A stretch of 64,000 nucleotides of DNA from Haplodiscus bocki (taxonomy: Eukaryota), in assembly GCA_965655095.1 (NCBI GenBank), contig OZ296649.1, forward strand, positions 14,570,001 through 14,634,000, in the 5' to 3' direction. Below, piece by piece: positions 1,481 through 47,289 of this stretch (positions within the stretch are counted from its first letter, which is position 1; each line of letters opens with the position of its first letter). The notes below the pieces were generated by a model that saw nothing but the letters and a program-made list of their open reading frames with translations, was not told the DNA's origin and searched no databases. The position numbers were made by a program, and so were the translations under genes.

Positions 1481-1626
1481 CGAAAATATTCAGAGACTTT
1501 TTCGCCTACAATTTTGTCTTAGCCGCAAATCATCAACAACCCGAAAATATTCAAAGACTTTTTCGCCTGCAAATTGTTTTAGCCGCAAATCATCAACTAT
1601 ATGCCGGAAATATTCAAAGACTTTTT
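1481..1626 (+). repeat. 61-64-bp tandem repeat (~2.4 copies) related to the 59-bp unit
   Basis: gaaaatattca(g/a)agactttttcgcct...tagccgcaaatcatcaac at about 1482 and 1543, with a partial third copy at about 1607. Confidence 0.88.
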
Positions 1627-1627
1627 G

Positions 1628-2976: not shown

Positions 2977-3176
2977 NNNNNNNNNNNNNNNNNNNNNNNN
3001 NNNNNNNNNNNNNNNNNNNNNNNNNNNNNNNNNNNNNNNNNNNNNNNNNNNNNNNNNNNNNNNNNNNNNNNNNNNNNNNNNNNNNNNNNNNNNNNNNNNN
3101 NNNNNNNNNNNNNNNNNNNNNNNNNNNNNNNNNNNNNNNNNNNNNNNNNNNNNNNNNNNNNNNNNNNNNNNNNNNN
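2977..3176. other. Assembly gap of exactly 200 N
   Basis: A round-number N run is typical of a scaffolding join of unknown true length. ORFs spanning it are artefacts. Confidence 0.98.
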
Positions 3177-4479: not shown

Positions 4480-7400
4480 CCTTTCACTATCGACGTAAAT
4501 TTTGATGTGTTGATCCCTGTTTTCACGTGCCTGATTACTCGCACTAATAGGTCACATGTCATTTAAATTGGTCACGTGATTGTGGTTCTGGCCCGTGGTT
4601 GGCTGCTAGTCTCCACACTTAATTGTACCCAACAGGTGATAACGATAATCGCACCTCAGTTTTGCCCAGATGGGTCACGTTGATGTTATTACGTTCAGAT
4701 TGGCAGACGCCAATGACGAAAAATAAACTTCTTTATTAGCATCGCAATTGAAGCAAAAAGCGCAACGATGGCTGACATCTACTTGAATGATTCCAATTGA
4801 TTAATATCAGGAAAAGTGCTCTTTGTTCGAACACGGTAGTTCACGGAGACTAATGAATGAATCTAGAGTGCACCATCCAACGTGAATTCCTTACCGCGTT
4901 ATGATGTTACTAGCAACGCTCAATCCAAGCGCAATGCTGATATCACGGAAGTTAAACCACGATGTAAATATAACCTATATCCACTCCCTGCACTAGTGAA
5001 AAAAATTTGATGCTGGTTCCACTTGAAGAAGTCGATATTTCGTGATTGAAAAAACTCTCACTGAAGTCACCATTGGCTTTTCCACAAGCGTTGTCGGAGT
5101 ACAGATTTCGTTACATAAGACAAAAATCCCTTTCACAACAAATGGCAGGAAGTACTATGACATAAAGGAATTCACATCGGTGTCTCAATATAGTGCTGCA
5201 TAAAATGCTGATATTTTCGTTTCTAAGATATAATATAAAGCTTCATAACATATGACATAGGGTAATTGAATGATAGCGTATTTGTTGGGCTTACATTTCC
5301 ATCAAGCTGACTTTATACTGCAGTTAGGAACAAGAAGTGGAGGCCCATTGTGTTAGATGTTATCATTTCTCTGGTATTGATGTGTCCTTCGCTAATTTGG
5401 GCGTATACTATCCTTTGTGTGTTCTTCAATGGGAGTGCGATGCTAATTTGGCAAACCTTCGCTGGTTTCGGAGAAATGGCTGATAGTCTTGGATTTCTCA
5501 CATCTTTGCCAATGCGGCTCTGACAAGTGTGACAATTGGTGAGTTTAGTAATTATTGACAGCCTGCACTGCCATTTTGTCTTTCATGCTCTGCTACTTCC
5601 ATGTTAAGCTGGGTGGCCATCACTTATTTGGCGGTAAAAGCATTAGTTTGGCGTGAAATTGCCTCTGTTGTAATTGTTCGAACCCAAAAAATTTTTTCTG
5701 GTCTTTTGTTGCCTGCGGTTGAACAACAGCGCGCCGTGCATTGGAACGAAAATTGGCACCAACTCAAGTAGTTTTCACAAGACGCTTTGCATGAATGTAC
5801 CTCCGATTATTGATTATTATCCAGCAACGTCATGCCCATGTGTGCTTCTTTTACTCACAAAAAACAAAGTAAAGTGCCATAGTTGTCACAAATCTCGGCA
5901 GCTGGTTCCTGTTTTCACACTTTTTGCGTTGTAGTCTGGAGATATTGGTGGTTTCCGGTCTTTACTTCGGTTCGCGGTCTTCAATTTTGTCTTAGCAGTA
6001 GGATCTTTCCGCCATACATTACTGTTTTCCATTTTGCGATCTTTGCAGTTTAGCTTTCTCGATTACCGAAATTTCGGGCGCTACCAGTAAACATACTTTA
6101 GTTCCATTTTCGCCATTTCCCAAAATGCGTTTGAGATTGGCGCCAGTATGGGATTAGCCTTTGAGTGGAATGTGCGGTCCGTGACTGATGGTTGTTGGGT
6201 TGATCAGCCCTTCTAATCGACGCGAGCCTTAAAATTCTGTGGTTTTCGTTGCTTTGTTGCATTTGCATTTCAGGGAAATGTCGTTCATTGGGGTAATATT
6301 GGGTGTTTTCAGATCTTTCATTGAAAGTTGTCTGTTGACAATCATGTTGGCCCTCCTTATCTTGATCGACGTCAGAGTTGTTGTTTCGTTATTTGTTTTC
6401 GTGCGCCTAATTACTTGAGCTAACTGGTCATGTGTCAACTAAGTTCCTCATGTGATTTTGATTCTGGCCCGTGGTTGGCTGCTGGTCTTCAAATCTAATT
6501 GTTCTCAACAAGAGTTATTGATAATCACACCTCAATTCTGCATAGCTGATTGCCGCTGGCCTTACTACTTTCTGATTGGCCGACCGTAATAACGAATAAA
6601 TAACTCCCTAGTTAAGATCGCAATTTGAGCAAAAATAGCAAAGATAGTTGACATCAATTCGAATGTTTCCAAATGATTAACAACAAGAAAAGTGTACCGT
6701 AAAAGAACACTGTTGTTCAGGGAAACTAATGATAGAGTGTAGAGTGTATAACCCAACGCGCATTCCTTACCGCTTTATATTGTTATTCGCTACTGTCGTT
6801 CCAGGCGCGATGCTGTTGTTGGGAAAGTTAAGCCTCGTTATAAATATAACTTGTTTCCACTCATTGCGCTTTTAATAAAATGTTGATGCTGGTTTCACTT
6901 GATGAAGTCGATATATCGTGGTTGAGGAAATTTTCACTAAATTAACCGTGGGTTTTTCACAAACGTTGTCGAAGCACAGATTTCTTTACAAAGGCCAGTT
7001 ATCGTGTTCACAACTATTGGGAGGAATTACTATGACGTAATGGATTTCATATCGGTGTCGGAATATAGTGCTGCATAAAATGCTGATATATTAGTTTCTA
7101 ATATATAATATAAAGCTTCACAACATATGACATAGCGTAATTGAATGATAGCACATTTGTTGGGTTTACATTTCCGTCAAGCTGGCTTTATACTGCAGTT
7201 AGGAACAAGAAGTGGAGGCCCATTGTGTTAGAAGTTATCATTTCTCTGGTATTGATGTGTCCTTTGCTAATTTGGGCGTGTACTATCCTTTGTGTGTTCT
7301 TCAATGGGAGTAAGATGCTAAATTGGCAAACCTTCGCTGGTTTCGGAGAAATGGCTGATGTTCTTGGATTTCTCACATCTTTGCCAATGCGGCTCTCACA

Positions 7401-10400
7401 AAACTGGCAATTGGTGATTTTGATAAATGTTTGACAGCCTGCATTGCCATTTTGTCTGTCATGCTCTGCTACTTCCATATTAGGCTGGTTGACCATCACT
7501 TTTTTGGCGGTAAAAGCACTATTTTGGCGTCAAAATGCCTCTGTTCTAATTGCTGTAAACCAAATCATTTTTGCTGGTTTTTTGTTGGCTGCAGTCGAAT
7601 AGCACCGTGCCGTGCATTGGAGTGAAGTTTGGCACAGACTCATGTAATTTCCACAAGACGCTTTGCAAGAATGTAACTTCGATTATTGAATAATATGCAG
7701 CAATGTCATGCCATTGTGCGCATCTTTAACTCACAAAAAAGAAAGTCAAGTGCCATGGTTGTCACAAATTTTGGCAGGAGATTCGCGTTTTTACAATTTT
7801 TGTGTCGTTGTCTGTAGATTTTGGTGTTTCCCGCTCTTTTATTGGTGCTGTGTCTTCACTTTTTTCTTAGCGGTAGTATCTTTTTGGCATACATTAATGT
7901 TTTCCCTTTGCGATCTTGACAGTTTCCTTCTATTGTAGGCCGAAGTTTCGTTTTTCAATAGCCTTCTCGAAGAGCAAAATTTGGAATGCTACCAGTAATC
8001 ATAATTCAAACCCAAGTTCACTGTCTTCTAAGTTGCGCCTGAAAATGGCGTCAGTACGGGAAGATACTTTGAGTGGAATGTGCGGTTCATGGCTGATGAC
8101 CGTTAGGTTGATCAGTCGTTCCTATGGACGCCTGCCTTTAACTTCTGTAGTTTTCGTTGCTTGGTTGCATTTTGGTTTCAGGGAAATGTTGATTGTGGTA
8201 ATATTGGGTGTTTTCAGATCTTTCCTTGAAAGTTATCTGCTGACAATCATGTTGGTCCTGCTTATCTTAATAGACGTCAGAGTTGTTGTTTCGGTTTTTG
8301 TTTTCCTGCGCCTAATTACTTGAGCTAACTGGTCATGTGTCAACTAAGTTCCTCATGTGATTTTGATTCTGGCCCGTGGTTGGCTGCTGGTCTCCAAATC
8401 TAATTGTTCTCAACAGGAGTTATTGATAATCACACCTCGATTCTGCATAGACGATTGCCGCTGGCCTTACTACTTTCTGATTGGCCGAACGTAATCACGA
8501 ATAAAAAACTTCCTAGTTAAGATCGCAATTTGAGCAAGAATAGCAAAGATAGTTGACATCAATTCGAATGTTTCCAAATGATTAACAACAAGAAAACTGT
8601 ACCTTAAAAAACACTGTTGTTCACGGAAAGTAATGATAGAGTCTAGAGTGTACCACCCAACGCGCATTCCTTACCGCGTTATAACGTTACTCGCTACTGT
8701 CGTTCCAGGCGCGATGCTGATGTTGGGAAAGTTATGCCACGTTATAAATATAACTTGTTTCCACTCATTGCGCTTCTAATAAAATGTTGATGCTGGTTTC
8801 ACTTGATGAAGTCGATATATCGTGGTTGTGGAAATTTTCACTAAATTCACCGTGGGCACATCGCAAACTTTGTCGTAGCAGACATTTCGTTACAAAGGCC
8901 ACTTGTCGCGTTCTCATCTAATGGGAGGAAGTACTATGACATAGTGGAATTCATGTTGGTGTCTCAATATAGTGCTGCATAAAATGCTGATATTTTCGTT
9001 TCTAAGATATAATATAAAGCTTCATAACATATGACATAGGGTAATTGAATGATAGCGTATTTGTTGGGCTTACATTTCCATCAAGCTGACTTTATACTGC
9101 AGTTAGGAACAAGAAGTGGAGGCCCATTGTGTTAGATGTTATCATTTCTCTGGTATTGATGTGTCCTTCGCTAATTTGGGCGTATACTATCCTTTGTGTG
9201 TTCTTCAATGGGAGTGCGATGCTAATTTGGCAAACCTTCGCTGGTTTCGGAGAAATGGCTGATAGTCTTGGATTTCTCACATCTTTGCCAATGCGGCTCT
9301 GACAAGTGTGACAATTGGTGAGTTTAGTAATTATTGACAGCCTGCACTGCCATTTTGTCTTTCATGCTCTGCTACTTCAATGTTAAGCTGGGTGGCCATC
9401 ACTTATTTGGCGGTAAAAGCATTAGTTTGGCGTGAAATTGCCTCTGTTGTAATTGTTCGAACCCAAAAAATTTTTTCTGGTCTTTTGTTGCCTGCGGTTG
9501 AACAACAGCGCGCCGTGCATTGGAACGAAAATTGGCACCAACTCAAGTAGTTTTCACAAGACGCTTTGCATGAATGTACCTCCGATTATTGATTATTATC
9601 CAGCAACGTCATGCCCATGTGTGCTTCTTTTACTCACAAAAAACAAAGTAAAGTGCCATAGTTGTCACAAATCTCGGCAGCTGGTTCCTGTTTTCACACT
9701 TTTTGCGTTGTAGTCTGGAGATATTGGTGGTTTCCGGTCTTTACTTCGGTTCGCGGTCTTCAATTTTGTCTTAGCAGTAGGATCTTTCCGCCATACATTA
9801 CTGTTTTCCATTTTGCGATCTTTGCAGTTTAGCTTTCTCGATTACCGAAATTTCGGGCGCTACCAGTAAACATACTTTAGTTCCATTTTCGCCATTTCCC
9901 AAAATGCGTTTGAGATTGGCGCCAGTATGGGATTAGCCTTTGAGTGGAATGTGCGGTCCGTGACTGATGGTTGTTGGGTTGATCAGCCCTTCTAATCGAC
10001 GCGAGCCTTAAAATTCTGTGGTTTTCGTTGCTTTGTTGCATTTGCATTTCAGGGAAATGTCGTTCATTGGGGTAATATTGGGTGTTTTCAGATCTTTCAT
10101 TGAAAGTTGTCTGTTGACAATCATGTTGGCCCTCCTTATCTTGATCGACGTCAGAGTTGTTGTTTCGGTATTTGTTTTCGTGCGCCTAATTACTTGAGCT
10201 AACTGGTCATGTGTCAACTAAGTTCCTCATGTGATTTTGATTCTGGCCCGTGGTTGGCTGCTGGTCTTCAAATCTAATTGTTCTCAACAAGAGTTATTGA
10301 TAATCACACCTCAATTCTGCATAGCTGATTGCCGCTGGCCTTACTACTTTCTGATTGGCCGACCGTAATAACGAATAAATAACTCCCTAGTTAAGATCGC

Positions 10401-13400
10401 AATTTGAGCAAAAATAGCAAAGATAGTTGACATCAATTCGAATGTTTCCAAATGATTAACAACAAGAAAAGTGTACCGTAAAAGAACACTGTTGTTCAGG
10501 GAAACTAATGATAGAGTGTAGAGTGTATAACCCAACGCGCATTCCTTACCGCTTTATATTGTTATTCGCTACTGTCGTTCCAGGCGCGATGCTGTTGTTG
10601 GGAAAGTTAAGCCTCGTTATAAATATAACTTGTTTCCACTCATTGCGCTTTTAATAAAATGTTGATGCTGGTTTCACTTGATGAAGTCGATATATCGTGG
10701 TTGAGGAAATTTTCACTAAATTAACCGTGGGTTTTTCACAAACGTTGTCGAAGCACAGATTTCTTTACAAAGGCCAGTTATCGTGTTCACAACTATTGGG
10801 AGGAATTACTATGACGTAATGGATTTCATATCGGTGTCGGAATATAGTGCTGCATAAAATGCTGATATATTAGTTTCTAATATATAATATAAAGCTTCAC
10901 AACATATGACATAGGGTAATTGAATGATAGCGTATTTGTTGGGTTTACATTTCCATCAAGCTGGCTTTATACTGCAGTTAGGAACAAGAAGTGGAGGCCC
11001 ATTGTGTTAGATGTTGTCTTTTCTCTGGTATTGATGTGTCCTTCGCTAATTTGGGCGTGTACTATCCTTTGTGTGTTCTTCAATGGGAGTAAGATGCTAA
11101 ATTGGCAAACCTTCGCTGGTTTCGGAGAAATGCCTGATGGTCTTGGATTTCTCACAACTTTGCCAATGCGGCTCCGACAAAACTAGCAATTGGTGATTTT
11201 GATAAATGTTTGACAGCCTGCATTGCCATTTTGTCTGTCATGCTCTGCTACTTCCATATTAGGCTGGTTGACCATCACTTTTTTGGCGGTAAAAGCACTA
11301 TTTTGGCGTCAAAATGCCTCTGTTCTAATTGCTGTAAACCAAATCATTTTTGCTGGTTTTTTGTTGGCTGCAGTCGAATAGCACCGTGCCGTGCATTGGA
11401 GTGAAGTTTGGCACAGACTCATGTAATTTCCACAAGACGCTTTGCAAGAATGTAACTTCGATTATTGAATAATATGCAGCAATGTCATGCCATTGTGCGC
11501 ATCTTTAACTCACAAAAAAGAAAGTCAAGTGCCATGGTTGTCACAAATTTTGGCAGGAGATTCGCGTTTTTACAATTTTTGTGTCGTTGTCTGTAGATTT
11601 TGGTGTTTCCCGCTCTTTTATTGGTGCTGTGTCTTCACTTTTTTCTTAGCGGTAGTATCTTTTTGGCATACATTAATGTTTTCCCTTTGCGATCTTGACA
11701 GTTTCCTTCTATTGTAGGCCGAAGTTTCGTTTTTCAATAGCCTTCTCGAAGAGCAAAATTTGGAATGCTACCAGTAATCATAATTCAAACCCAAGTTCAC
11801 TGTCTTCTAAGTTGCGCCTGAAAATGGCGTCAGTACGGGAAGATACTTTGAGTGGAATGTGCGGTTCATGGCTGATGACCGTTAGGTTGATCAGTCGTTC
11901 CTATGGACGCCTGCCTTTAACTTCTGTAGTTTTCGTTGCTTGGTTGCATTTTGGTTTCAGGGAAATGTTGATTGTGGTAATATTGGGTGTTTTCAGATCT
12001 TTCCTTGAAAGTTATCTGCTGACAATCATGTTGGTCCTGCTTATCTTAATAGACGTCAGAGTTGTTGTTTCGGTTTTTGTTTTCCTGCGCCTAATTACTT
12101 GAGCTAACTGGTCATGTGTCAACTAAGTTCCTCATGTGATTTTGATTCTGGCCCGTGGTTGGCTGCTAGTCTCCAAATCTAATTGTTCTCAACAGGAGTT
12201 ATTGATAATCACACCTCGATTCTGCATAGACGATTGCCGCTGGCCTTACTACTTTCTGATTGGCCGAACGTAATCACGAATAAAAAACTTCCTAGTTAAG
12301 ATCGCAATTTGAGCAAGAATAGCAAAGATAGTTGACATCAATTCGAATATTTCCAAATGATTAACAACAAGAAAACTGTACCTTAAAAAACACTGTTGTT
12401 CACGGAAAGTAATGATAGAGTCTAGAGTGTACCACCCAACGCGCATTCCTTACCGCGTTATAACGTTACTCGCTACTGTCGTTCCAGGCGCGATGCTGAT
12501 GTTGGGAAAGTTATGCCACGTTATAAATATAACTTGTTTCCACTCATTGCGCTTCTAATAAAATGTTGATGCTGGTTTCACTTGATGAAGTCGATATATC
12601 GTGGTTGTGGAAATTTTCACTAAATTCACCGTGGGCACATCGCAAACTTTGTCGTAGCAGACATTTCGTTACAAAGGCCACTTGTCGCGTTCTCATCTAA
12701 TGGGAGGAAGTACTATGACATAGTGGAATTCATGTTGGTGTCTCAATATAGTGCTGCATAAAATGCTGATATATTACTTTCTAGTATATGATATGAAGCT
12801 TCATAACATATGACATAGGATAATTGAATGATCGCGTCTTTGTTGGGTTTACACTTTCATCAAGCTGACTTTATACTGCAGTTAGGAACAAGAAGTGGAG
12901 GCCCATTGTGTTAGATGTTATCATTTCTCTGGTATTGATGTGTCCTTCGCTAATTTAGGCGTGTACTATCCTTTGTGTGTTCTTCAATGGGAGTAAGATG
13001 CTAAATTGGCAAACCTTCGCTGGTTTCGGAGAAATGGCTGATGGTCTTGGATTTCTCACATCTTTGCCAATGCGGCTCTGACACAACTAGCAATTGGTGA
13101 TTTTGATAAATGTTTGACAGCCTGCATTGCCATTTTGTCTGTCATGCTCTGCTACTTCCAAATTAGGCTGGTTGACCATCACTTTTTTGGCGGTAAAAGC
13201 ACTATTTTGGCGTCAAATTGCCTCTGTTCTAATTGCTGTAATCCAAATCATTTTTGCTGGTTTTTTGTTGGCTGCAGTCGAATAGCACCGTGCCGTGCAT
13301 TGGAGTGAAGTTTGGCACAGACTCATGTAATTTCCACAAGACGCTTTGCAAGAATGTAACTTCGATTATTGAATAATATGCAGCAATGTCATGCCATTGT

Positions 13401-16400
13401 GCGCATCTTTAACTCACAAAAAAGAAAGTCAAGTGCCATGGTTGTCACAAATTTTGGCAGGAGATTCGCGCTTTTACAATTTTTGTGTCGTTGTCTGTAG
13501 ATTTTGGTGTTTCCCGCTCTTTTATTGGTGCGGTGTCTTCACTTTTTTCTTAGCGGTAGTATCTTTTTGGCATACATTAATGTTTTCCCTTTGCGATCTT
13601 GACAGTTTCCTTCTATTGTAGGCCGAAGTTTCGTTTTTCAATAGCCTTCTCGAAGAGCAACATTTGACATGCTACCAGTAATCATAATTCAAACCCAAGT
13701 TCACTGTCTTCTAAGTTGCGCCTGAAAATGGCGTCTACACGGGAAGATACTTTGAGTAGAATGTGCGGTTCATGGCTGATGATCGTTAGGTTGATCAGTC
13801 GTTCCTATGGACTTCTGCCTTTAATTTCTGTGGTTTTCGTTGCTTGGTTGCATTTTGGTTTCAGGGAAATGTTGATTGTGGTAATATTGGGTGTTTTCAG
13901 ATCTTTCCTTGAAAGTTATCTGCTGACAATCATGTTGGTCCTGCTTATCTTAATAGACGTCAGAGTTGTTGTTTCGGTTTTTGTTTTCCTGCGCCTAATT
14001 ACTTGAGCTAACTGGTCATGTGTCAACTAAGTTCCTCATTTGATTTTGATTCTGGCCCGTGGTTGGCTGCTGGTCTCCAAATCTAATTGTTCTCAACAGG
14101 AGTTATTGATAATCACACCTCGATTCTGCATAGACGATTGCCGCTGGCCTTACTACTTTCTGATTGGCCGAGCGTAATCACGAATAAAAAACTTCCTAGT
14201 TAAGATCGCAATTTGAGCAAGAATAGCAAAGATAGTTGACATCAATTCGAATGTTTCCAAATGATTAACAACAAGAAAACTGTACCGTAAAAAAACACTG
14301 TTGTTCACGGAAAGTAATGATAGAGTCTAGAGTGTACCACCCAACGCGCACTCCTTACCGCGTTATAACGTTACTCGCTACTGTCGTTCCAGGCGCGATG
14401 CTGATGTTGGGAAAGTTATGCCACGTTATAAATATAACTTGTTGATGCTGGTTTCACTTGATGAAGTCGATATATCGTGGTTGTGGAAATTTTCACTAAA
14501 TTCACCATGGGCACATCGCAAACTTTGTCGTAGCAGACATTTCGTTACAAAGGCCACTTGTCGCGTTCCCATCTAATGGGAGGAAGTACTATTACATAGT
14601 GGAATTCAAGTCGGTGTCTCAATATAGTGCTGCATAAAATGCTGATATATTACTTTCTAGTATATGATATGAAGCTTCATAACATATGACTTAGGATAAT
14701 TGAATGATCGCGTCTTTGTTGGGTTTACACTTTCATCAAGCTGACTTTATACTGCAGTTAGGAACAAGAAGTGGAGGCCCATTGTGTTAGATGTTATCAT
14801 TTCTCTGCTATTGATGTGTCCTTCGCTAATTTAGGCGTGTACTATCCTCTGTGTGTTCGTCAATGGGAGTGAGATGCTAATTTGGCAAACCTTCGCTGGT
14901 TTCGGAGAAATGGCTGATGGTCTTGGATTTCTCACATCTTTGCCAATGCGGCTCTGACAAGTGTGGCAATTTGTGAGTTTATTATTTATTGACAGCCTGC
15001 ACTGCCATTTTGTCTTTCATGCTCTGCTACTTCCATGTTAAGCTGGGTGGCCATCACTTTTTTGGCGGTAAAAAAATTAGTTTGGCGTCAAATTGCCTCT
15101 GTTGTAATTGTTCGAACCCAAAAAATTTTTTCTGGTCTTCTGTTGTCTGCGGTTGAACAACACCGCGCCGTGCATCGGAACGAAAATTGGCACTAACTCA
15201 AGTAGTTTTCACAAGACGCTTTGCATGAATGTACCTCCGATTATTGATTATTATCCAGCAACGTCATGCCCATGTGTGCTTCTTTTACTCACAAAAAACA
15301 AAGCAAAGTGCCATAGTTGTCACAAATCTCGGCAGCTGGTTCCTGTTTTCACACTTTTTGCGTTGTAGTCTGGAGATATTGGTGGTTTCCGGTCTTTACT
15401 TCGGTTCGCGGTCTTCAATTTTGTCCTAGTAGTAGGATCTTTCCGCCATACATTAATGCTTTCCATTTTGCGATCTTTGCAGTTTAGTTTTCTCGATTAC
15501 CGAAATTTAGGGCACTACCAGTAAACATACTTTAGTTCCACTTTCGCCATCTTCCAAAATGCGTTTGAGATTGGCGCCAGTATGGGATTAGCCTTTGAGT
15601 GGAATGTGCGGTCCGTGACTGATGGTTGTTAGGTTGATCAGCCCTTCTAATCGACGCGAGCCTTAAAGTTCTGTGGTTTTCGTTGCTTTGTTGCATTTGC
15701 ATTTCAGGGAAATGTCGTTCATTGGGGTAATATTGGGTGTTTTCAGATCTTTCATTGAAAATTGTCTGTTGACAATCATGTTGGCCCTCCTTATCTTGAT
15801 CGACGTCAGAGTTGTTGTTTCGGATTTTGTTTTCGTGCGCCTAATTACTTGAGCTAACTGGTCATGTGTCAACTAAGTTCCTCATGTGATTTTGATTCTG
15901 GCCCGTGGTTGGCTGCTGGTCTTCAAATCTAATTGTTCTCAACAAGAGTTATTGATAATCACACCTCAATTCTGCATAGGTGATTGCCGCTGGCCTCACT
16001 ACTTTCTGACTGGCCGACCGTAATCACGAATAAATAACTTCCTAGTTAAGATCGCAATTTGAGCAAAAATAGCAAAGATAGTTGACATCAGTTCGAATGT
16101 TTCCAAATGATTAACAACAAGAAAAGTGTACCGTAAAAGAACACTGTTGTTCAGGGAAACTAATGATAGAGTGTAGAGTGTATCACCCAGCGCGCATTCC
16201 TTACCGCGTTACAATGTTACTCGCTACTGTCGTTCCAGGCGCGATGCTGATGTTGGGAAAGTTATGCCACGTTTTAAATAAAACTTTCTTCCAGTCATTG
16301 CGCTTCTAGTAAAATTTTGATGATGGTTTCACTTGATGAAGTCGATATATCGTGGTTAAGGAAATTTTCACTAAATTCACCGTGGGTTTTTCACAAACGT

Positions 16401-37400: not shown

Positions 37401-40400
37401 TAATATAAAGCTTCATAACATATGACATAGGTTAATTGAATGATCGCGTCTTTGTTGGGTTTACACTTTCATCAAGTTGACTTTATACTGCAGTTAGGAA
37501 CAAGAAGTGGAGGCCCATTGTGTTAGATGTTGTCATTTCTCTGGTATTGATGTGTCCTTCGCTAATTTGGGCGTGTACTATCCTGTGTGTGTTCTTCAAT
37601 GGAAGTGCGATGCTACTTTGGCAAACCTTCGCTGGTTTCGGAGAAATGGCTGATGGTCTTGGATTTCTCACAGCTTTGCCAATGCGGCTCTGACAAAACC
37701 GGCAATTGGTGAGTTTAATAATTGATTGACAGCCTGCATTGCCATTTTGTCTGTCATGCTCTGCTACTTCCATATTAGGCTGGTTGACCATGACTTTTTT
37801 GGCGGTAAAAGCACTAGTTTGGCGTCAAATTGCCTCTGTTCTAATTGCTGTAAACCAAATCATTTTTGCTGGTTTTTTATTGGCTGCAGTCGAATAGCAC
37901 CGTTCCGTGCATTGGAGTGAAGTTTGGCACAGACTCATGTAACTTCCACAAGACGCTTTGCAAGAATGTAACTCCGATTATTGAAAAACATGCAGCAAAG
38001 TCATGCCATTGTGCGCATCTTTAACTCACAAAATATAAAGTCAAGTGTCATGGTTGTCACAAATTTCGGCAGGAGATTCGCGTTTTCACATTTTTTGTGT
38101 CATTGTCTGTAGATTTTGGTGTTTCCCGCTCTTTTATTGGTGCGGTGTCTTCACTTTTTTTTCAGCGGTAGTATCTTTTTGGCATACATTAATGTTTTCC
38201 CTTTGCGATCTTGGCAGTTTCTTTCTTTTGTAGGCCGATGTTTCGTTTTTCAATAGCCTTCTCGAAGAGCAAAATTTGGAATGCTACCAGTAATCATAAT
38301 TCAAACCAAAGTTCACTGTCTTCTAAGTTGCGCCTGAAAAAGGCGTCAGTACGGGAAGACACTTTGAGTGGATTGTGCGGTTCATGGTTGATGATAGTTA
38401 GGTTGATCAGTCGTTCCTATGGACGCTTGCCTTTAATTTCTGTGGTTTTCGTTGCTTGGTTGCATTTTGGTTTCAGGGAAATGTTGATTGTGGTAATATT
38501 GGGTGTTTTCAGATCTTTCCTTGAAAGTTATCTGCTGACAATCATGTTGGTCTTGCTTATCTTAATAGACGTCAGAGTTGTTGTTTCGGTTTTTGTTTTC
38601 CTGCGCCTAATTACTTGAGCTAACTGGTCATGTGTCAACTAAGTTCCTCGTGTGATTTTGATTCTGGCCCGTGGTTGGCTGCTGGTCTTCAAATCTAATT
38701 GTTCTCAACAGGAGTTATTGATAATCACACTTTAGTTCTGCATAGGTGATTGCCGCTGGCCTTACTAGTTTCTGATTGGCCAACCGTAATCACGAATAAA
38801 TAAGTTCCTAAATAAGATCGCAGTTTGAGCAAAAATAGCAAAGATAGTTGACATCAATTCGAATGTTTCCAAATGATTAACAACAAAACAAGTCTACCGT
38901 GAAAGAACATTGTTGTTCAGGGAAACTATTGATAGAGTGTAGAGTGTATCACCCAATGCGCATTCCGTACCGCGTTATAATGTTACTCGCTACTGTCGTT
39001 CCAGGCGCGATGCTGATGTTGGGAAAGTTATGCCTCGTTATAAATAAAACTTTCTTTCACTCATTGCGCTTCTAATAAAATGTTGATGCTGGTTTCACTT
39101 GAAGAAGTCGATATATCGTGGTTGAAGATATTTTCACTAAATTCACCGTGGGTTTTTCACAAACGTTGTCGAAGCACAGATTTCGTTACAAAGGCCACTT
39201 ATCGTGTTCACAACTATTGGGAGGAATTACAATGACGTAATTGATTTCATATCGGTGTCGGAATATAGTGCTGCATAAAATGCTGATATATTAGTTTCTA
39301 ATTTATAATATAAAGCTTCATAACATATGACATAGGGTAATTGAATGATAGCGTATTTGTTGGGTTTACACTTCCATCAAGCTGGCTTTATACTGCAGTT
39401 AGGAACAAGAAGTGGAGGCCCATTGTGTTAGATGTTGTCATTTCTCTGGTATTGATGTGTCCTTTGCTAATTTGGGCGTGTAATATCCTTTGTGTGTTCT
39501 TCAATGGGAGTAAGATGCTAAATTGGCAAACCTTCGCTGGTTTCGGAGAAATGGCTGATGGTCTTGGATTTCTCACATCTTTGCCAATGCGGCTCTGACA
39601 AAACTAGCAATTGGTGATTTTAATAAATGATTGACAGCCTGCATTGCCATTTTGTCTGTCATGCTCTGCTACTTCCATATTAGGCTAGTTGACCATCACT
39701 TTTTTGGCGGTAAAAGCACTATTTTGGCGTCAAATTGCCTCTGTTCTAATTGCTGTAAACCAAATCATTTTTTCTGGTTTTTTGTTGGCTGCGGTCGAAA
39801 AAAACCGTGCCGTGCATCGGAGTAAAGTTTGGGACCAACTCAAGTAACTTCCACAAGGCGCTTTGCAAGAATGTAACTCCGATTATCGAATGATATGCAG
39901 CAATGTCATGCCATTGCGTGCATTTTAACTCACAAAAAAGAAAGTCAAGTGTCATGGTTGTCACAAATTTTGGCAGGAGATTCGCGTTTTTACAATTTTT
40001 GTGTCGTTGTCTGTAGATTTTGGTGTTTCCCGCTTTTTTATTGGTGCGGTGTCTTCACTTTTTTCTTAGCGGTAGTATCTTTTTGGCATACATTATTGTT
40101 TTCCATTTGCGATCTTGACAGTTTCCTTCTATTGTAGGCCGAAGTTTCGTTTTTCAATAGCCTTCCCGAAGAGCAAAATTTGGACTGCTACCAGTAATCA
40201 TAATTCAAACCCAAGTTCACTGTCTTCTAAGTTGCGCCTGAAAATGGCGTCAGTACGGGAAGATACTTTGAGTGGAATGTGCGGTTCATGGTTGATGATC
40301 GTTAGGTTGATCAGTCGTTCCTATGGACGCCTGCCTATAATTTCTGTGGTTTTCGTTGCTTGGTTGCATTTTGGTTTCAAGGAAATGTTGATTGTGGTAA

Positions 40401-43400
40401 TATTGGGTGTTTTCAGATCTTTCCTTGAAAGTTATCTGCTGACAATCATGTTGGTCTTGCTTATCTTAATAGACGTCAGAGTTGTTGTTTCGGTTTTTGT
40501 TTTCTTGCGCCTAATTACTTGAGCTAACTGGTCATGTGTCAACTAAGTTCCTCATGTGATTTTGATTCTGGCCCGTGGTTGGCTGCTGGTCTTCAAATCT
40601 AATTGTTCTCAACAGGAGTTATTGATAATCACACCTCAAGTCTGCATAGGTGATTGCCGCTGGCCTTGCTACTTTCTGATTGGCCGACCGTAATCACGAA
40701 TAAATAACTTCCTGGTTAAGATCGCAATTTGAGCAAAAATAGCAAAGATAGTTGGCATCAGTTCGAATGTTTCCAAATGATTAACAACAAGAAAAGTGTA
40801 CCGTAAAAGAACACTGTTGTTCACGGAAACTAATGAAAGAGTCTAGAGTGTATCACCCAAAGCGCATTCCTTACCGCGCTATAATGTTACTCTCTACTGT
40901 CGTTCCAGTTGCGATGCTGATGCTGGTAAAATTATACCACGTTGTAAATATAACTTGTTTCCACTCATTGCGCTTTTAATAAAATGTTGATGCTGGTTTC
41001 ACTTGATGAAGTCGATATATCGTGGTTGAGGAAATTTTCACTAAATTCACCGTGGGTTTTTCACAAACGTTGTCGAAGCACAGATTTCGTTACAAAGGCC
41101 AGTTATCGCGTTCACAACTATTGGGCGGAATTACTATGACGTAATGGATTTCATATCGGTGTCTGAATATAGTGCTGCATAAAATGCTGATATATTAGTT
41201 TCTAATATATAATATAAAGCTTCATAACATATGACATAGGTTAATTGACTGATCGCGTCTTTGTTGGGTTTACACTTTCATCAAGCTGACTTTACACTGC
41301 AGTTAGGACCAAGAAGTGGAGGCCCATTGTGCTAGATGTTATCATTTCTCTGGTGTTGATGCGTCCTTCACTAATTTGAGCTGTACTATCCTTTGAGTGT
41401 TCTTCAATGGGAGTAGGATACCAGTTTGGCAAACCTTCGCTGGTTGGGGAGAAATGGCTGGTGATCTTGGATTCCTCACATTTTTGCACATGCGGCTCTG
41501 ACAAGTTTAGTATTCGTGAGTTTTTTAATTGGTTGCTAGCCTGCACTGCCTATTTGTCTGTCATGCTCTGCTACTTCCATATTAGGCTGGGTGACCATCA
41601 CGTTTTTGGCGGTCAAAGCGCTAGTTTGGTGTCAAATTGCCTCTTTTCTAATTGCTCTAACCCAAATCATCTTTTCTAGGTTTTTGTTGTCTGCAGTCGA
41701 ATAGCACCGTGCCGTGCATTGGAGTGAAGTTTGGCACCAACTCAAGTAACTTCCACAAGACGGTTTTCAAGAATGTAACTCCGATTATTCAATAATATGC
41801 AGCAATGTCATGCCATTGTGCGAATCTTTAACTCACAAAAAAGAAAGTCAAGTGCCATGGTTGTCACAAATTTCGGCAGCTGATTCGCGTAGGCAGAATT
41901 TTTGTGTCGTAGTCGGGAGATAATGGTGTTTTCCTTCTTTTTTTTGGTTCGGAGTCTTGAATTTTTTCTGAACTGTAGCATCATCCCGGCATACATTATT
42001 GCATTCATCTCTGCGACCTTGGCAGTTTCTCTCTTTTTTAGGCAAAATTTATCCCTTTCTACAACCTCGAAAAACGAAACTACAAGTGCTACCTGTAATC
42101 AAACTTTGGTTCCATTTTCGCCTTCGTCTGAAATGCGTCTGAAATTGGCGTCAGTGGGGGATTATCTTTTGATTGGAATGTGCGGTTCGTGACTGATGAT
42201 TGTTAGGTTGATCAGTCATTCCGATCTACGCCAGCCTTAAAGTTTTGTGGTTTTCGTTGCTTTGTTGCATTTGCATTTCAAGGTAATGTCGTTGATTGTG
42301 GTAATATTGGGTGGTTTCAGGTTCTTCTTTGAAAAATGTTTGCTGGCAAATATGTTGGTCCTCCTTATTTTTGTCGACGTAAGGGTTGCTGTGTCTGTTT
42401 TTGTTTTCGTGCGCCTAATTAATTGAACTAACTGGTCAAGTGTCAACTGAGCTGATCACGTGATTTTGAATCTGGTCTGCGGTTGGCTGCTGGTCTTTAA
42501 ACCTAATTGTACTCAACAGGTGATAAAGATAATCACACTTCAATCCTGCACAGGTGGTTCCCGCTGGTCTGACTAATTTTTGATTGGCGCACGCCAATCA
42601 CGAATAAATAACTTCTCAGATAAATTCGCATTTTAAGCACAAATAGCAAAGATAGCTAACATCAATTCGGATGATTCCAAATGGTTAATAACTAGAAAAG
42701 TGTACCGTAAAAGAACACTGTTGTTCACGGAGACTAATGAATGAGTCTAGAGTGTATCACCCAACGAGCATTCCTTACCGCGTTATAATGTTACTCGCTA
42801 CTGTCGTTCCAGGCGCGATGCTGATGTTGGAAAAGTTATGCCACGTTATAAATATAACTTGCTTCCACTCATTGCGCTTTTAATAAAAAATTGATGCTGG
42901 TTTCACTTGATGAAGTCGATATATCGTGGTTGAGGAATTTTTCACTAAATTCACCGTGGGTTTTTCACAAACGTTGTCGTAGCAGACATTCCGTTACAAA
43001 GGCCAGTTATCGCGTTCACAACTATTGGGCGGAATTACTATGACGTAATGGATTTCATATCGGTGTCTGAATATAGTGCTGCATAAAATGCTGATATATT
43101 ACTTTCTAATATATAATATGAAGCTTCATAACATATGACATAGGGTAATTGAATGATCGCGTATTTGTTGGGTTTACATTTCCATCAAGCTGGCTTTATC
43201 CTGCAGTTTCGAACAAGAAGTGGAGGCCCATTGTGCTAGAGGTTATCAATTCTCTGTTAATCATGTGTCCTTCACTAATTTGGGCGTGTACTATCCTGTG
43301 TGTGTTCTTCAATGGAAGTGCGATGCTAATTTAGCAAACCTTCGCTGGTTTCGGAGAAATGGCTGATGGTCTTGGATTTCTCACATCTTTGCCAATGCGG

Positions 43401-46400
43401 CTCTGACAAAACTGGCAATTGGTGAGTTTAATAAATGATTGACAGCCTGCATTGCCATTTTGTCTGTCATGCTCTGCTACTTCCATATTAGGCTGGTTGA
43501 CCATGACTTTTTTGGCGGTAAAAGCACTAGTTTGGCGTCAAATTGCCTCTGTTCTAATTGCTGTAAACCAAATAATTTTTGCTGGGTTTTTGTTGGCTGT
43601 AGTCGAATAGCACCGTGCCGTGCATTGGAGTGAAGTTTGGCACAGACTCATGTAATTTCTACAAGACGCTTTGCAAGAATGTAACTCCGATTATTGAATT
43701 ATATGCAGCAAAGTCATGCCATTGTGCGCATCTTTAACTCACAAAATATAAAGTCAAGTGCCACGGTTGTCACAAATTTTGGCAGGAATTTCGCGTTTTC
43801 ACAATTTTTGTGTCGTTGTCTGTAGATTTTGGTGTTTCCCGCTCTTTTATTGGTGCGGTGTCTTCACTTTTTTCGCAGCGGTAGTACCTTTTTGGCATAT
43901 ATTAATGTTTTCCCTTTGCGATCTTGGCAGTTTCCTTCTTTTGTAGGCCGATGTTTCGTTTTTCAATAGCCTTCTCGAAGAGCAAAATTTGGAATGCTAC
44001 CAGTAATCATAATTCAAACCCAAGTTCACTGTCTTCTAAGTTGCGCCTGAAAATGGCGTCAGTACGGGAAGACACTTTGAGTGGATTGTGCGGTTCATGG
44101 TTGATGATCGTTAGGTTGATCAGTCGTTCCTATGGACGCCTGCCTTTAATTTCTGTGGTTTTCGTTGCTTGGTTGCTTTTTGGTTTCAGGGAAATGTTGA
44201 TTGTGGTAATATTGGGTGTTTTCAGATCTTTCCTTGAAAGTTATCTGCTGACAATCATGTTGGTCCTGCTTATCTTAATAGACGTCAGAGTTGTTGTTTC
44301 GGTTTTTGTTTTCCTGCGCCTAATTACTTGAGCTAACTGGTCATGTGTCAACTAAGTTCCTCATGTGATTTTGATTCTGGCCCGTGGTTGGCTGCTGGTC
44401 TTCAAATCTAATTGTTCTCAACAGGAGTTATTGATAATCACACCTTAATTCTGCATAGGTGATTGCCGCTGGCCTTACTAGTTTCTGATTGGCCAACCGT
44501 AATCACGAATAAATAACTTCCTAAATAAGCTCGCAATTTGAGCAAAAATAGCAAAGGTAGTTGACATCAATTCGAATGTTTCCAAATGATTAACAACAAG
44601 AAAAGTGTACCGTAAAAGAACACTGTTGTTCACGGAAACTAATGAAAGAGTCTAGAGTGTATCACAAAAAAGCGCAATCCTTACCGCGTTATAATGTTAC
44701 TCTCTACTGTCGTTCCAGTTGCGATGCTGATGCTGGTAAAATTATACCACGTTGTAAATATAACTTGTTTCCACTCATTGCGCTTTTAATAAAATGTTGA
44801 TGCCGGTTTCACTTGATGAAGTCGATATATCGTGGTTGAGGAAATTTTCACTAAATTCACCGTGGGTTTTTCACAAACGTTGTCGAAGCACAGATTTCGT
44901 TACAAAGGCCAGTTATCGCGTTCACAACTATTGGAAGGAATTACTATGACGTAATGGATTTCATATCGGTGTCTGAATATAGTGCTGCATAAAATGCTGA
45001 TATATTACTTTCTAATATATAATATGAAGCTTCATAACATATGACATAGGGTAATTGAATGATCGCGTATTTGTTGGGTTTACAATTCCATCAAGCTGGC
45101 TTTATCCTGCAGTTTCAAACAAGAAGTGGAGGCCCATTGTGCTAGAGGTTATCAATTCTCTGGTAATCATGTGTGCTTCACTAATTTGGGCTTTTACTAT
45201 CCTTTGAGTGTTCTTCAACGGGAGTAGGATACCAATTTGGTAAACGTTCGCTGGTTGGGGAGAAATGGCTGGTGATCTTGGATTCCTCACATTTTTGCAC
45301 ATGCGGCTCTGACAAGTTTAGTAATGGTGAGTTTTTTAATTGATTGCTAGCCTGCACTGCCATTTTGTCTGTCATGCTCTGCTACTTCCATATTAGGCTG
45401 GGTGACCATCACGTTTTTGGCGGTCAAAGCGCTAGTTCGGTGTCAAATTGCCTCTTTTCTAATTGTTCTAACCCAAATCATCTTTCCCAGGTTTTTGTTG
45501 GCTGCAGTCGAATAGAACTGTGCCGTGCATTGGCGTGAAGTTTGGCACAGACTCATGTAACTTTCACAAGACGCTTTGCATAAATGTAACTCCGATTATT
45601 GATTAATATGCAGCGAGGTCATGCCATTGTGCGAATCATTAACTCACAAAAAAGAAAATCAAGTGCCATCGTTGTCACAAATTTCGGAAGCTGATTCGCG
45701 TAGGCAAAATTTTTGTGTCGTAGTCGGCAGATAATGGTGTTTTCTCTCTTTTTTTTGGTGCGGAGTCTTGAATTTTTTCTGAACTGTAGCATCATTCCGG
45801 CATACATTTTTGCATTCATCTCTGCGACTTTGGTAGTTTCCCTCTTTTTTAGGCAAAATTTATCCCTTTCTACAACCTCGAAAAACGAAACTCCAAGTGC
45901 TACCTGTAATCAAACTTTGGTTCCATTTTCGCCTTCTTCTGAAATGCGTCTGAAATTGGCGTCAGTGGGGGATTATCTTTTGATGGGAATGTGCGGTTCG
46001 TGACTGATGATTGTTAGGTTGATCAGTCATTCCGATCTACGCCAGCCTTAAAGTTTTGTGGTTTTCGTTGCTTTGTTGCATTTGCATTTCAAGGTAATGT
46101 CGTTGATTGTGGTAATATTGGGTGGTTTCAGGTTTTTCTTTGAAAAATGTTTGCTGGCAAATATGTTGGTCCTCCTTATTTTTGTCGACGTAAGGGTTGC
46201 TGTGTCTGTTTTTGTTTTCGTGCGCCTAATTAATTGAACTAACTGGTCAAGTGTCAACTGAGCTGATCACGTGATTTTGACTCTGGTCTGCGGTTGGCTG
46301 CTAGTCTTTAAACCTAATTGTTCTCAACAGGTGATAAAGATAATCACACTTCAATCCTGCACAGGTGGTTCCCGCTGGTTGACTAATTTTTGATTGGCCC

Positions 46401-47003
46401 ACGCCAATCACGAATAATTAACTTCTCAGATAAATTCGCATTTTAAGCACAAATAGCAAAGATAGCTAACATCAATTCGGATGATTCCAAATGCTTAATA
46501 ACTAGAAAAGTGTACCGTAAAAGAGCACTGTTGTTCACGGAGACTAATGAATGAGTCTAGAGTGTATCACCCAACGAGCATTCCTTAGCGCGTTATAATG
46601 TTACTCGCTACTGTCGTTCCAGGCGCGATGCTGATGTTGGAAAAGTTATGCCACGTTATAAATATAACTTGCTTCCACTCATTGCGCTTTTAATAAAATG
46701 TTGATGCTGGTTTCACTTGATGAAGTCGATATATCGTGGTTGAGGAAATTTTCACTAAATTCACCGTGGGTTTTTCACAAACGTTGTCGAAGCACAGATT
46801 TCGTTACATAAGACATGAATCGCCTTCACAACTAATGAGAGGAAGTAATATGACCTAATGGCTGTCATATCGGTGTGTGAATACATTGCTGAATAAATTG
46901 CTTATGTATTATTTTATAATAAATAGTTTAAAGCTTCATATCATATGACGTAGACTAATTGCTTATTCATTTTTTGCGTGGTTTATATTTCCATCATGCT
47001 GGC
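4480..47003. repeat. Tandem macrosatellite of ~22.4 monomers of ~1.9 kb
   Basis: The anchor ttatactgcagttaggaacaagaagtggaggcccattg (minor variants) recurs at 5313, 7188, 9092, 10967, 12871, 14747, 16622, 18527, 20402, 22307, 24213, 26117, 27991, 29895, 31770, 33675, 35579, 37483, 39388, 41292, 43196 and 45102, spaced 1874-1906 bp. Diverged partial units lie at both ends. Confidence 0.99.
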
Positions 47004-47289
47004 ATGACACTCACAATTGTAAAACTTCAAGACTAAAAAACTTTCAAGTCAACAATCAGAGGCGGCCAATTCACAGCTTAATGAAAGTCCATTTTTACCG
47101 ACCTAAAAATTTTCCATTGATTTGTGATTTTGAAGTGTTTTTATGTTTTTAAATTGTTATGCTGAGACATTGCATTTTATCCTGGTCAGATGTCATCGTT
47201 TATTGAAGTATGGTCTAATTTTCTCGAAAACTTGTTAGTTCGGAATTTTGTTCTGCACTCACGAATGCATTGGCGCTGACAGAAGAAGC

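What the first reader, a model, noticed from the sequence alone, without database searches (positions are those of the whole stretch)
4480..47003. 42.5-kb macrosatellite of 1.9-kb monomers with nested higher-order repeats
Seen: monomers fall into three types by their central segment: A (aaatctcggcagctgg, ~1875 bp, lacking ~30-35 bp at e.g. 6050), B (aaattttggcaggag, ~1904 bp) and C (aaatttcggcagctgattc, ~1905 bp). The order is A B A B B A B A B C B A B A B C C B B C B C. An AB dimer is repeated almost exactly at 3779 bp (5313/9092, 7916/11695). A six-monomer block (BABABC) is repeated at ~11,369 bp and shares private variants (ctgtcccgt 17802/29171; cagattccattac ~16411/27780; ggcctcactac ~15992/27361). 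A trimer period of ~5713 bp links units 18 and 21 (acaaaatataaag, ggccgatgtttcg), and units 16 and 17 are a monomer duplication. Inference: alpha-satellite-like higher-order organisation built from an unusually long, complex monomer; a candidate centromeric, heterochromatic or small-RNA-producing locus.
Basis: partly seen in the sequence, partly recalled or inferred. Interest (0 to 1): 0.7.

Follow-up and report, generated by a model that had tools for sequence, protein, structure and literature searches.

The report
Tandem array from dead retrotransposon piece
A 1.9-kb piece of one old, dead gypsy-type jumping gene (part of its terminal repeat plus the adjoining inner sequence) was copied head to tail about 22 times where it stood, and blocks of copies were later re-copied. 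This is a real but ordinary way for satellite-like DNA to arise, and nothing points to a centromere.

Summary
Window 4307-47009 is a head-to-tail array of 22 full units and one partial unit, each 1.84-1.91 kb.
- a 2-unit copy at 3779 bp, 99.2% identical
- a 5-unit block repeated at 11,369 bp, 97.8%
- a looser trimer at about 5713 bp, 93%
- a unit duplication (u16/u17), 97.8%

The monomer is not a new complex sequence. About 830 bp come from the LTR of an old, dispersed Ty3/gypsy-type retrotransposon family. The other 1.07 kb is the internal sequence next to that element's 3' LTR. The element's coding strand is the window's minus strand.

All units share one internal-to-LTR junction. The array ends on the right exactly at an LTR terminus, next to unique DNA. 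All units form one clade against genomic copies.

The best reading is that one inserted element lost most of its interior, leaving two LTRs around a short internal piece. Unequal exchange between those LTRs then amplified the unit.

The array occurs once in the 1.5-Gb genome, lies in unique DNA, and has no conserved ORF and no Rfam match. The centromeric reading is not supported. Chromatin state and small RNAs were not testable.

Earlier notes of this scan report several other transposon-derived arrays elsewhere in this genome.

The parts
4307..47009 (-). Whole tandem array: 22 full units (1843-1908 bp) plus a terminal partial unit, all in one orientation. The sense strand of the parent retrotransposon is the window's minus strand.
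   Evidence: units and identities. (the pol domains of family copies lie on the strand opposite to the monomer's + strand). (the + strand is T-rich, AT skew about -0.17 across the array only).
4307..5309 (-). LTR-derived part of the left terminal unit (u01). It covers LTR positions about 290-1301, which is longer than in all other units, and is 75-78% identical to the other units' LTR parts. It is probably the remnant of the original 3' LTR, truncated on its outer side.
   Evidence: five genomic LTR copies align from their position 281-294 to the end at window 4307-5309. (u01 branches first inside the array clade). (3177-4306 is single-copy).
10141..10971 (-). LTR-derived segment of a representative unit (u04). 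It covers LTR positions about 474-1301, the U3-side 830 bp in the element's sense.
   Evidence: about 70-72% identity to dispersed copies. (a 1.3-kb dispersed element with TG...CA ends and 5-bp target duplications in L005 and L008). (LTR end).
10972..12040 (-). Internal-region segment of a representative unit (u04 into the start of u05). It is the last 1.07 kb or so of the element's interior, next to the 3' LTR. The polypurine-tract remnant seen in genomic copies is partly deleted here.
   Evidence: 66-69% identity to the stretch adjoining an LTR in copies on C11, C7, C12 and C1. (pyrimidine-rich run after the LTR end on the + strand in the C12, C11 and C10 copies, less clear in C7, i.e. purine-rich upstream of the 3' LTR in sense).
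12034..12045 (.). The single novel junction that defines the monomer. Internal sequence is joined to LTR position about 474. The same junction recurs once per unit in all classes. Both parents are CT-rich at the breakpoint, so microhomology is possible.
   Evidence: internal homology ends and LTR homology begins within about 10 bp, the same in A, B, C and D units. (no copy elsewhere in the genome spans this junction).
46181..47009 (-). Right terminal LTR-derived part (in u23). It ends in the canonical LTR terminus (..GCTGGCATGACA), followed by unique host DNA. It is probably the remnant of the original 5' LTR. It is 92% identical to class D LTR parts.
   Evidence: terminus. (the flank is single-copy apart from a 155-bp dispersed repeat). 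(u23 groups with u11, u18 and u21).
5313..12870 (.). Youngest event: a two-unit (3779-bp) tandem duplication, 5313-9091 vs 9092-12870, 99.18% identical.
13812..34611 (.). Higher-order block: units u06-u10 (13812-23245) repeated as u12-u16 (25154-34611) at a period of 11,369 bp, 97.8% identical. Unit u11, which lies between them, has no partner.
32711..46039 (.). Single-unit duplication u16/u17 (97.8%), and a looser three-unit repeat u17-u19 vs u20-u22 (93% overall, with u19/u22 only 87%).

Best explanation
The array is a transposon-derived macrosatellite that arose in place from a single insertion of an old Ty3/gypsy-type LTR retrotransposon.

Shown:
- Each 1.9-kb unit consists of about 830 bp of the family's 1.3-kb LTR plus the 1.07 kb of internal sequence that adjoins the 3' LTR.
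- The two pieces are joined by one junction that is the same in every unit.
- The array ends exactly at an LTR terminus against unique DNA.
- All units are each other's closest relatives.

Inferred:
- The inserted copy suffered an internal deletion. The deletion ran from inside its 5' LTR to about 1.07 kb before its 3' LTR and may have used a few bases of CT-rich microhomology. It left a partial LTR, a short internal piece and a second LTR.
- The two LTR remnants were direct repeats about 830 bp long. Unequal exchange or non-allelic gene conversion between them made the first extra unit.
- Out-of-register exchange between units then expanded the array.
- Three internal-part lineages (A, B/D, C) split early, at about 20% divergence.
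- Later gene conversion and crossovers inside units produced mosaic units and homogenised the LTR part of A, B and C.
- The latest events re-copied blocks of 5-6 units, 3 units, 1 unit and 2 units, in that order from older to younger (2-3%, 7%, 2% and 0.8% divergence; the ranking is approximate).

The array most likely has no function of its own. It probably persists as neutral, possibly silenced, repeat DNA.
For: - Anatomy of the monomer: 368 or more candidate dispersed matches to monomer positions 145-966 at about 70% identity. These are 1.3-kb elements with TGTCAG...ATGACA ends, and two copies have perfect 5-bp target duplications.
- Full-length relative: a 9.8-kb copy on C11 has this element at both ends, and the monomer's second half lies next to one of them.
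- Element type: RT_RNaseH, Integrase_H2C2, rve and RVT_1 occur in family copies, in the order RT, RNaseH, IN, on the strand opposite to the monomer's + strand.
- Orientation: TGG follows directly after the 5' LTR of the C11 copy, as expected for a primer-binding site. A purine-rich run precedes the 3' LTR in sense.
- Single junction: it is shared by all classes and is absent elsewhere in the genome.
- Array ends: an intact LTR terminus at 47009 is followed by unique DNA. The left flank is also unique.
- Common descent: both the LTR parts and the internal parts of all units form clades with 100/100 support against genomic copies.
- Edge units: they are the most divergent, as expected when homogenisation acts in the interior.
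- Mosaic units.
- Graded ages of the block duplications.
- No function seen: no Rfam family and no Pfam family in monomer ORFs. The recurring 135-aa ORF is open only in B/D units and shows no third-position excess of variable sites (8/12/7).
- Known mechanism: LTR-LTR ectopic exchange is described in PMC5932611. An LTR-UTR~LTR progenitor is proposed for maize CRM1TR and CRM4TR in PMC3648361.
Against: - The left LTR is truncated at position about 290. No target-site duplication can therefore be shown for this particular insertion.
- The order of events (deletion first, then exchange) is inferred, not observed. A tandem of fuller elements followed by deletions would give the same end state.
- The internal part differs much more between classes (67-81% in its distal 600 bp) than the LTR part does (93-98% among A, B and C). 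This needs an added assumption of regional homogenisation.
- Copy number and the youngest duplication rest on one assembly. The available reads are short-read contigs and cannot confirm them.
- Lack of function is argued from absence of signals, not from expression or chromatin data.
Confidence: 0.85

Rival explanations
1. The array is a functional centromeric or pericentromeric satellite organised like alpha satellite. Higher-order repeats would be maintained because the array binds centromeric chromatin.
For: Nested higher-order duplications are real. Retrotransposon-derived long-monomer satellites do serve as centromeric repeats in some plants, for example potato, as cited in PMC3648361.
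Against: - The array is at one locus only in 1.5 Gb.
- It is 42.7 kb long.
- Each block is present only twice.
- The flanks are single-copy DNA rather than repeat-dense sequence.
- It lies at 14.6 Mb of a 151.7-Mb chromosome.
- Deep, non-homogenised unit lineages (about 20% divergence) differ from an actively homogenised centromere core.
Confidence: 0.03
2. Part of the structure is an assembly artefact. The array exists, but the near-identical 3.8-kb duplicate, and perhaps the 11.4-kb block, were created or miscounted by the assembler.
For: The 3779-bp copies are 99.18% identical. Outside a 270-bp patch they differ at only a handful of sites in the first 3.4 kb or so. Such repeats are the hardest to assemble. 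The public reads on offer could not span them.
Against: - The copies are not identical. They differ at 31 sites, including a clustered patch that looks like a conversion tract.
- The 5-unit blocks differ by 2.2% with indels. That is well within what long accurate reads resolve.
- There is no gap (N) inside the array.
- The unit order is non-periodic in a way that collapsed or expanded assemblies rarely produce.
Confidence: 0.08
3. The array came from an extrachromosomal circle. A deleted one-LTR circle of the element would have been copied by rolling-circle replication, and the concatemer inserted into the chromosome.
For: A circle holding one partial LTR plus 1.07 kb of interior would give exactly one junction per unit. 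This route is listed among the known mechanisms in PMC5932611 and PMC3648361.
Against: - The right end of the array coincides with a canonical LTR terminus next to host DNA, as left by integrase.
- The left terminal unit carries about 185 bp more LTR than any other unit.
- The two edge units are the most divergent.

All of this is expected from growth between two resident LTRs and not from insertion of a uniform concatemer.
Confidence: 0.04

Closest known systems
CRM1TR and CRM4TR, tandem repeats derived from maize centromeric Ty3/gypsy retrotransposons (Sharma, Wolfgruber & Presting 2013, PMC3648361)
   Same: - The monomer is built entirely from part of an LTR plus the adjoining non-coding internal sequence of a Ty3/gypsy-type element.
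- One characteristic internal-to-LTR junction per unit.
- The proposed progenitor is an element with an internal deletion that leaves two LTRs around a short piece.
- Growth is by non-allelic conversion or unequal exchange.
- Recombinant (mosaic) monomers occur.
- The repeats sit at one or two loci only.
   Different: - Here the internal piece is the one next to the 3' LTR, not the 5' UTR.
- The host is an animal. Earlier notes of this scan call it a probable reef coral, which was not tested here.
- The locus lies in unique DNA rather than at a known centromere.
- The unit lineages are much older (up to about 20-25% divergence).
[quoted passage not shown]
   Same: Direct LTRs of one element serve as the substrate for unequal exchange. 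Neighbouring units share an LTR. 'Internal-to-internal' junctions arise through deletions.
   Different: Those cases are mostly low-copy dimers of near-complete elements and are polymorphic in populations. Here a heavily deleted 1.9-kb unit reached about 22 copies and then evolved a layered block structure.
Long-monomer retrotransposon-derived satellites of Solanum: Sobo (4.7-kb unit) and the potato centromeric repeats of 979 bp to 5.4 kb (cited in PMC3648361)
   Same: Kilobase-sized monomers with homology to gypsy LTRs or internal regions, arranged in head-to-tail arrays.
   Different: Those arrays span hundreds of kb to Mb and occupy pericentromeres or centromere cores with CENH3. This one is 43 kb, at a single locus, with no evidence of centromere association.
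Primate alpha satellite higher-order repeats
   Same: Blocks of several non-identical monomers are repeated with higher identity than neighbouring monomers show to each other. Edge units are more divergent than interior ones.
   Different: - Alpha satellite has a 171-bp monomer, is AT-rich, forms Mb-scale arrays on every chromosome, has many copies of each higher-order unit, and binds CENP-A.
- Here the monomer is 1.9 kb and transposon-derived, each block has two copies, and there is one locus.

Membership tests
Satellite / macrosatellite DNA with higher-order repeat structure | Head-to-tail tandem copies of a unit of 1 kb or more, forming an array of tens of kb | tested here: met
   23 collinear copies, 1843-1908 bp each, at 4307-47009.
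Satellite / macrosatellite DNA with higher-order repeat structure | Multi-unit blocks are more alike than adjacent units are | tested here: met
   u06-u10 vs u12-u16 are 97.8% identical and the 2-unit copy is 99.2%, against 87-88% between neighbouring A, B and C units. The tree pairs are supported.
Satellite / macrosatellite DNA with higher-order repeat structure | Abundant or multi-locus in the genome | tested here: not met
   Matches above 80% identity occur only inside C2:14.574-14.617 Mb. That is about 0.003% of the genome.
Centromeric satellite (alpha-satellite-like) | Occupies the centromere and binds CenH3/CENP-A | not testable with these tools
   No chromatin data. Position 14.6 Mb of 151.7 Mb and single-copy flanks speak against it but do not decide it.
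Centromeric satellite (alpha-satellite-like) | The same repeat family forms large arrays on several or all chromosomes | tested here: not met
   No other array of this monomer is found on any of the other large chromosome-scale contigs or the unplaced contigs.
LTR-retrotransposon-derived tandem repeat (CRM1TR/CRM4TR type) | The monomer is composed wholly of LTR sequence plus adjoining internal sequence of one element family | tested here: met
   Positions 142-972 match LTR positions 474-1301. Positions 973-1908 plus 1-131 match the internal sequence next to an LTR in copies on C11, C7, C12 and C1.
LTR-retrotransposon-derived tandem repeat (CRM1TR/CRM4TR type) | The parent is a bona fide LTR retrotransposon: TG..CA LTRs, target duplication, primer-binding site, polypurine tract, pol domains | tested here: met
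   - TGTCAG..ATGACA ends and 5-bp duplications in L005 and L008.
- TGG directly after the 5' LTR.
- A purine run before the 3' LTR.
- RVT_1, RT_RNaseH, Integrase_H2C2 and rve.

Several of the domain hits fall below Pfam's curated cut-off because all copies are decayed.
LTR-retrotransposon-derived tandem repeat (CRM1TR/CRM4TR type) | One shared deletion junction per unit, showing a single origin | tested here: met
   The same breakpoint interval is found in A, B, C and D units. All units are monophyletic for both halves.
LTR-retrotransposon-derived tandem repeat (CRM1TR/CRM4TR type) | In-place origin: the array is bounded by the element's own LTR ends and host DNA | tested here: inconclusive
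   Right end: met, with an intact terminus at 47009 followed by unique DNA. Left end: the LTR is truncated at position about 290, so no target duplication can be read.

The most novel reading that the evidence does not exclude
The array is more than debris. Each unit keeps the U3-side part of the LTR, including a TATA-like block that is conserved in all aligned LTR copies. The locus could therefore be transcribed unit after unit and act as a standing source of small RNAs against this gypsy family, or as a heterochromatin nucleation site. Its survival with three unit lineages about 20% apart could then reflect selection for retention rather than chance.
Probability: 0.08. Interest if true: 0.45.

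Novelty: new member of a known kind. Interest (0 to 1): 0.2.

Why it matters
This is a clean, fully dissectable example of how one retrotransposon insertion becomes a layered macrosatellite. The progenitor family, the single founding junction, the two original LTR ends and a graded series of block duplications (from about 20% down to under 1% divergence) can all be read from one locus.

Earlier notes of this scan report several other transposon-derived arrays in this genome. Together they suggest that this animal genome readily turns transposon fragments into kilobase-unit tandem arrays. That tendency could be studied as a genome-wide property.

The array does not open a new question about centromeres or RNA biology. 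Repeat annotators should label it as LTR-derived tandem DNA and not as a new satellite family of unknown origin.

Tried and rejected
- **Tandem Repeats Finder:** it did not report the array, because its longest period is 500 bp. The array was defined by self-BLAST and anchors instead.
- **RNA gene array (rDNA, snRNA or tRNA-like):** rejected. There is no Rfam match at gathering score in the whole window.
- **Tandemly repeated protein gene:** rejected. The longest recurring ORF is 135 aa with a TTG start, on the + strand, antisense to the element. It is open only in B/D units. It has no Pfam hit, and its variable sites are spread 8/12/7 over the three codon positions. The minus-strand ORFs of 56-69 aa also have no Pfam hit.
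- **MITE or DNA transposon as the dispersed 1.3-kb element:** considered because of its short inverted ends. Rejected in favour of a solo LTR, given the TG..CA ends, the 5-bp duplications, and the same element at both ends of a 9.8-kb copy carrying pol domains.
- **Plus strand as the element's sense strand:** rejected by the strand of the pol domains, the primer-binding site and the polypurine tract.
- **Ectopic conversion from other genomic copies as the cause of the deep unit classes:** rejected. Both halves of all units are monophyletic against genomic copies.
- **CpG depletion as a sign of germline methylation:** there is none. Observed/expected is 0.88 in the array and 0.77-0.83 in the flanks.
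- **Reads:** four runs (two samples, one study) are kept only as short-read contigs, with pieces of 672 bp or less. They show presence at high word depth but cannot give copy number, strand, expression or the block structure.
- **Target duplication of the C11 full-length copy:** not readable.
- **Look-ups of earlier findings by sequence and by words:** both were blank.
- **Flanking ORFs:** no Pfam domains, apart from one weak sub-threshold importin-repeat hit.
Full report
**1. The observation**

A 2-kb query taken from inside the region matches 23 collinear + strand copies between 4518 and 47003. A 20-base anchor recurs every 1871-1908 bp. Tandem Repeats Finder missed the array only because its longest period is 500 bp.

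I numbered the units u01-u23, with starts at 4313 (nominal; homology begins at 4307), 6221, 8129, 10000, 11908, 13812, 15655, 17562, 19435, 21343, 23246, 25154, 27024, 28931, 30803, 32711, 34612, 36517, 38424, 40328, 42229, 44137 and 46040.

The identity matrix and a maximum-likelihood tree give four classes:
- A: u01, 03, 06, 08, 12, 14
- B: u02, 04, 05, 07, 09, 13, 15, 19
- C: u10, 16, 17, 20, 22

The block duplications are as follows:

| Blocks compared | Identity | Note |
|---|---|---|
| 5313-9091 vs 9092-12870 (2 units, 3779 bp) | 99.18% | 31 mismatches, no gaps, 14 of them within 7136-7406 |
| u06-u10 vs u12-u16 (period 11,369 bp) | 97.8% over 8.8 kb | |
| u11 vs u17 | 85% | so five units pair, not six |
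| u16 vs u17 | 97.8% | |
| u17-u19 vs u20-u22 | 93% overall | u19/u22 only 87% |

The tree pairs u06/u12, u07/u13, u08/u14, u18/u21, u16/u17 and u02/u04.

**2. What the monomer is**

A search of the window's own genome (1.5 Gb; the window is C2:14,570,001-14,634,000) found matches above 80% identity only inside this array.

Monomer positions 145-966 match hundreds of dispersed places at about 70% identity. There were 368 candidates, which is a lower bound. Comparing these places with each other shows a 1.3-kb element, of which the monomer holds the last 830 bp or so. The element has TGTCAG...ATGACA ends, and two copies have perfect 5-bp target duplications: CATAT in L005 and GTGAT in L008. This is the signature of solo LTRs.

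The rest of the monomer (positions 973-1908 and 1-131) matches at 66-69% a few places where it lies directly next to such an LTR. On C11 a 9.8-kb copy carries the LTR at both ends.

ORF fragments of this and related copies carry RT_RNaseH, Integrase_H2C2 and rve and RVT_1. Their order is RT, RNaseH, IN, which is the Ty3/gypsy-type order. They always lie on the strand opposite to the monomer's + strand. Some of these hits are below Pfam's curated cut-off, because all copies are decayed (67-72% identical to one another).

Two further features fix the orientation. TGG follows the 5' LTR directly in the C11 copy, as expected for a primer-binding site. A purine-rich run precedes the 3' LTR in sense in three or four genomic copies. 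The element's sense strand is therefore the window's minus strand. This also explains the T-rich + strand, with an AT skew of about -0.17 that is confined to the array.

Each unit is thus the last 1.07 kb or so of the element's interior plus the first 830 bp or so of its LTR.

**3. Single origin, in place**

Internal homology ends and LTR homology (from LTR position about 474) begins within about 10 bp, at window 12034-12045 in u05. The same interval is found in A, B, C and D units. Both parents are CT-rich there, so a few bases of microhomology are possible but cannot be proved at this divergence. No place elsewhere in the genome spans this junction.

The array ends on the right at 47009 in an intact LTR terminus, followed by DNA that is single-copy except for a 155-bp dispersed repeat.

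On the left, u01 carries more LTR than any other unit, from LTR position about 290, at window 4307-5309. It abuts single-copy DNA.

In trees with genomic copies as outgroups, the LTR parts of all 23 units form one clade, and so do the internal parts of all 22 full units (100/100 each). The deep unit classes therefore arose within the array and not by conversion from other copies.

The edge units are the most divergent. The u01 LTR part is 75-78% identical to the others. The u23 LTR part is 81-85% identical to A, B and C and 92% to D.

**4. Mechanism**

The steps below are inferred from the anatomy:

1. One element inserted into unique DNA.
2. A deletion from inside its 5' LTR to about 1.07 kb before its 3' LTR left two LTR remnants in direct orientation around a short internal piece.
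3. Unequal exchange, or non-allelic repair between these remnants, added the first extra unit.
4. Out-of-register exchange among units expanded the array.

This is the LTR-UTR~LTR model proposed for maize CRM1TR and CRM4TR, mirrored to the 3' side (PMC3648361). It is also the LTR-LTR route summarised by McGurk and Barbash (PMC5932611).

The divergence ladder gives a relative timeline:

| Comparison | Identity |
|---|---|
| Genomic copies vs array | about 67% |
| The two presumed original LTRs (u01 vs u23) | 75% |
| Internal parts of A, B/D and C | about 80-83%, down to 67-81% in the distal 600 bp |
| LTR parts of A, B and C | 93-98% |
| Five-unit block and u16/u17 | about 98% |
| Two-unit copy | 99.2% |

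The LTR parts of A, B and C were therefore homogenised later than the internal lineages split.

Units are mosaics:
- D has a B-type interior and a u23-type LTR part.
- u05 has an A-type LTR part and a B-type interior.
- u01 has an old LTR part and an interior identical to that of u03.

These mosaics are direct traces of crossovers or conversion tracts inside units. The 14 clustered mismatches within 7136-7406 look like such a tract.

**5. Function**

I found nothing that suggests one:
- No Rfam family matches.
- No Pfam family matches any monomer ORF.
- The recurring 135-aa ORF is antisense to the element and closed in A and C units. It shows no excess of variable sites at third codon positions.
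- CpG is not depleted.
- Expression, small RNAs and chromatin could not be tested. The only public runs are kept as short-read contigs of unknown library type.

Those contigs do show monomer fragments at high word depth in two samples. The repeat is therefore not peculiar to the assembly, but they cannot confirm copy number or the block structure.

**6. Comparison with what is known, and verdict**

The centromeric, alpha-satellite-like reading fails the features that I could test:
- one locus only
- 43 kb long
- two copies per block
- unique flanks
- deep lineages that have not been homogenised

The array meets the tested features of an LTR-retrotransposon-derived tandem repeat. The one gap is that the left LTR end is truncated, so the insertion's target duplication cannot be read.

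Earlier notes of this scan describe several other transposon-derived kilobase-unit arrays elsewhere in the same genome: three from gypsy-type elements and one from a LINE. I did not test these notes. They add the context that such arrays recur in this genome, which one note calls a probable reef coral.

I rate this as a new member of a known kind. It is carefully dissectable but ordinary. The main residual uncertainties are the assembly of the youngest duplication and the untested chromatin and RNA state.

Noticed in passing
window 1100-1846 (within ORFs 1246-1944 and 1455-1937, + strand): There are short tandem repeats left of the array: 59-61-bp units (1100-1259 and 1481-1626) and a 26-bp GCA/ACA-rich unit repeated 8.4 times (1629-1846). 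They lie in an open frame that would encode a Gln-rich stretch. There is no Pfam hit.
   Followed up: partly
window 2977-3176: A 200-base run of N lies 1.1 kb left of the array. It limits what can be said about the wider left flank.
   Followed up: no
window 47875-48028: A dispersed repeat of about 155 bp has at least 744 candidate copies in the genome at 86-93% identity. It looks like a young SINE or MITE and is unrelated to the array.
   Followed up: no
L023/L028 (G000:C12:10380328-10385926): Another decayed copy of the same retrotransposon family also has an internal deletion that joins its interior (integrase region) to LTR position about 454. This is close to the array's breakpoint at about 474. 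It may be a recurrent breakpoint in this LTR, or coincidence.
   Followed up: no
window 10617-10633 and the same place in every unit; alignment A1 columns about 1030-1045: A TATAAATA-containing block is one of the best-conserved stretches of the LTR across all aligned genomic copies and the monomer. It may be the LTR promoter's TATA box, which would mean every unit keeps it. Orientation and activity were not tested.
   Followed up: no
window 55666-56097 (- strand): An ORF fragment gives a weak hit to Importin_rep_6, below Pfam's threshold (E 0.0014, 19.3 bits against a cut-off of 23.9). It may be an exon of a host gene right of the array.
   Followed up: no
ORFs at 60-64 kb gave no Pfam hit in my scans. 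I did not examine this further.
   Followed up: no
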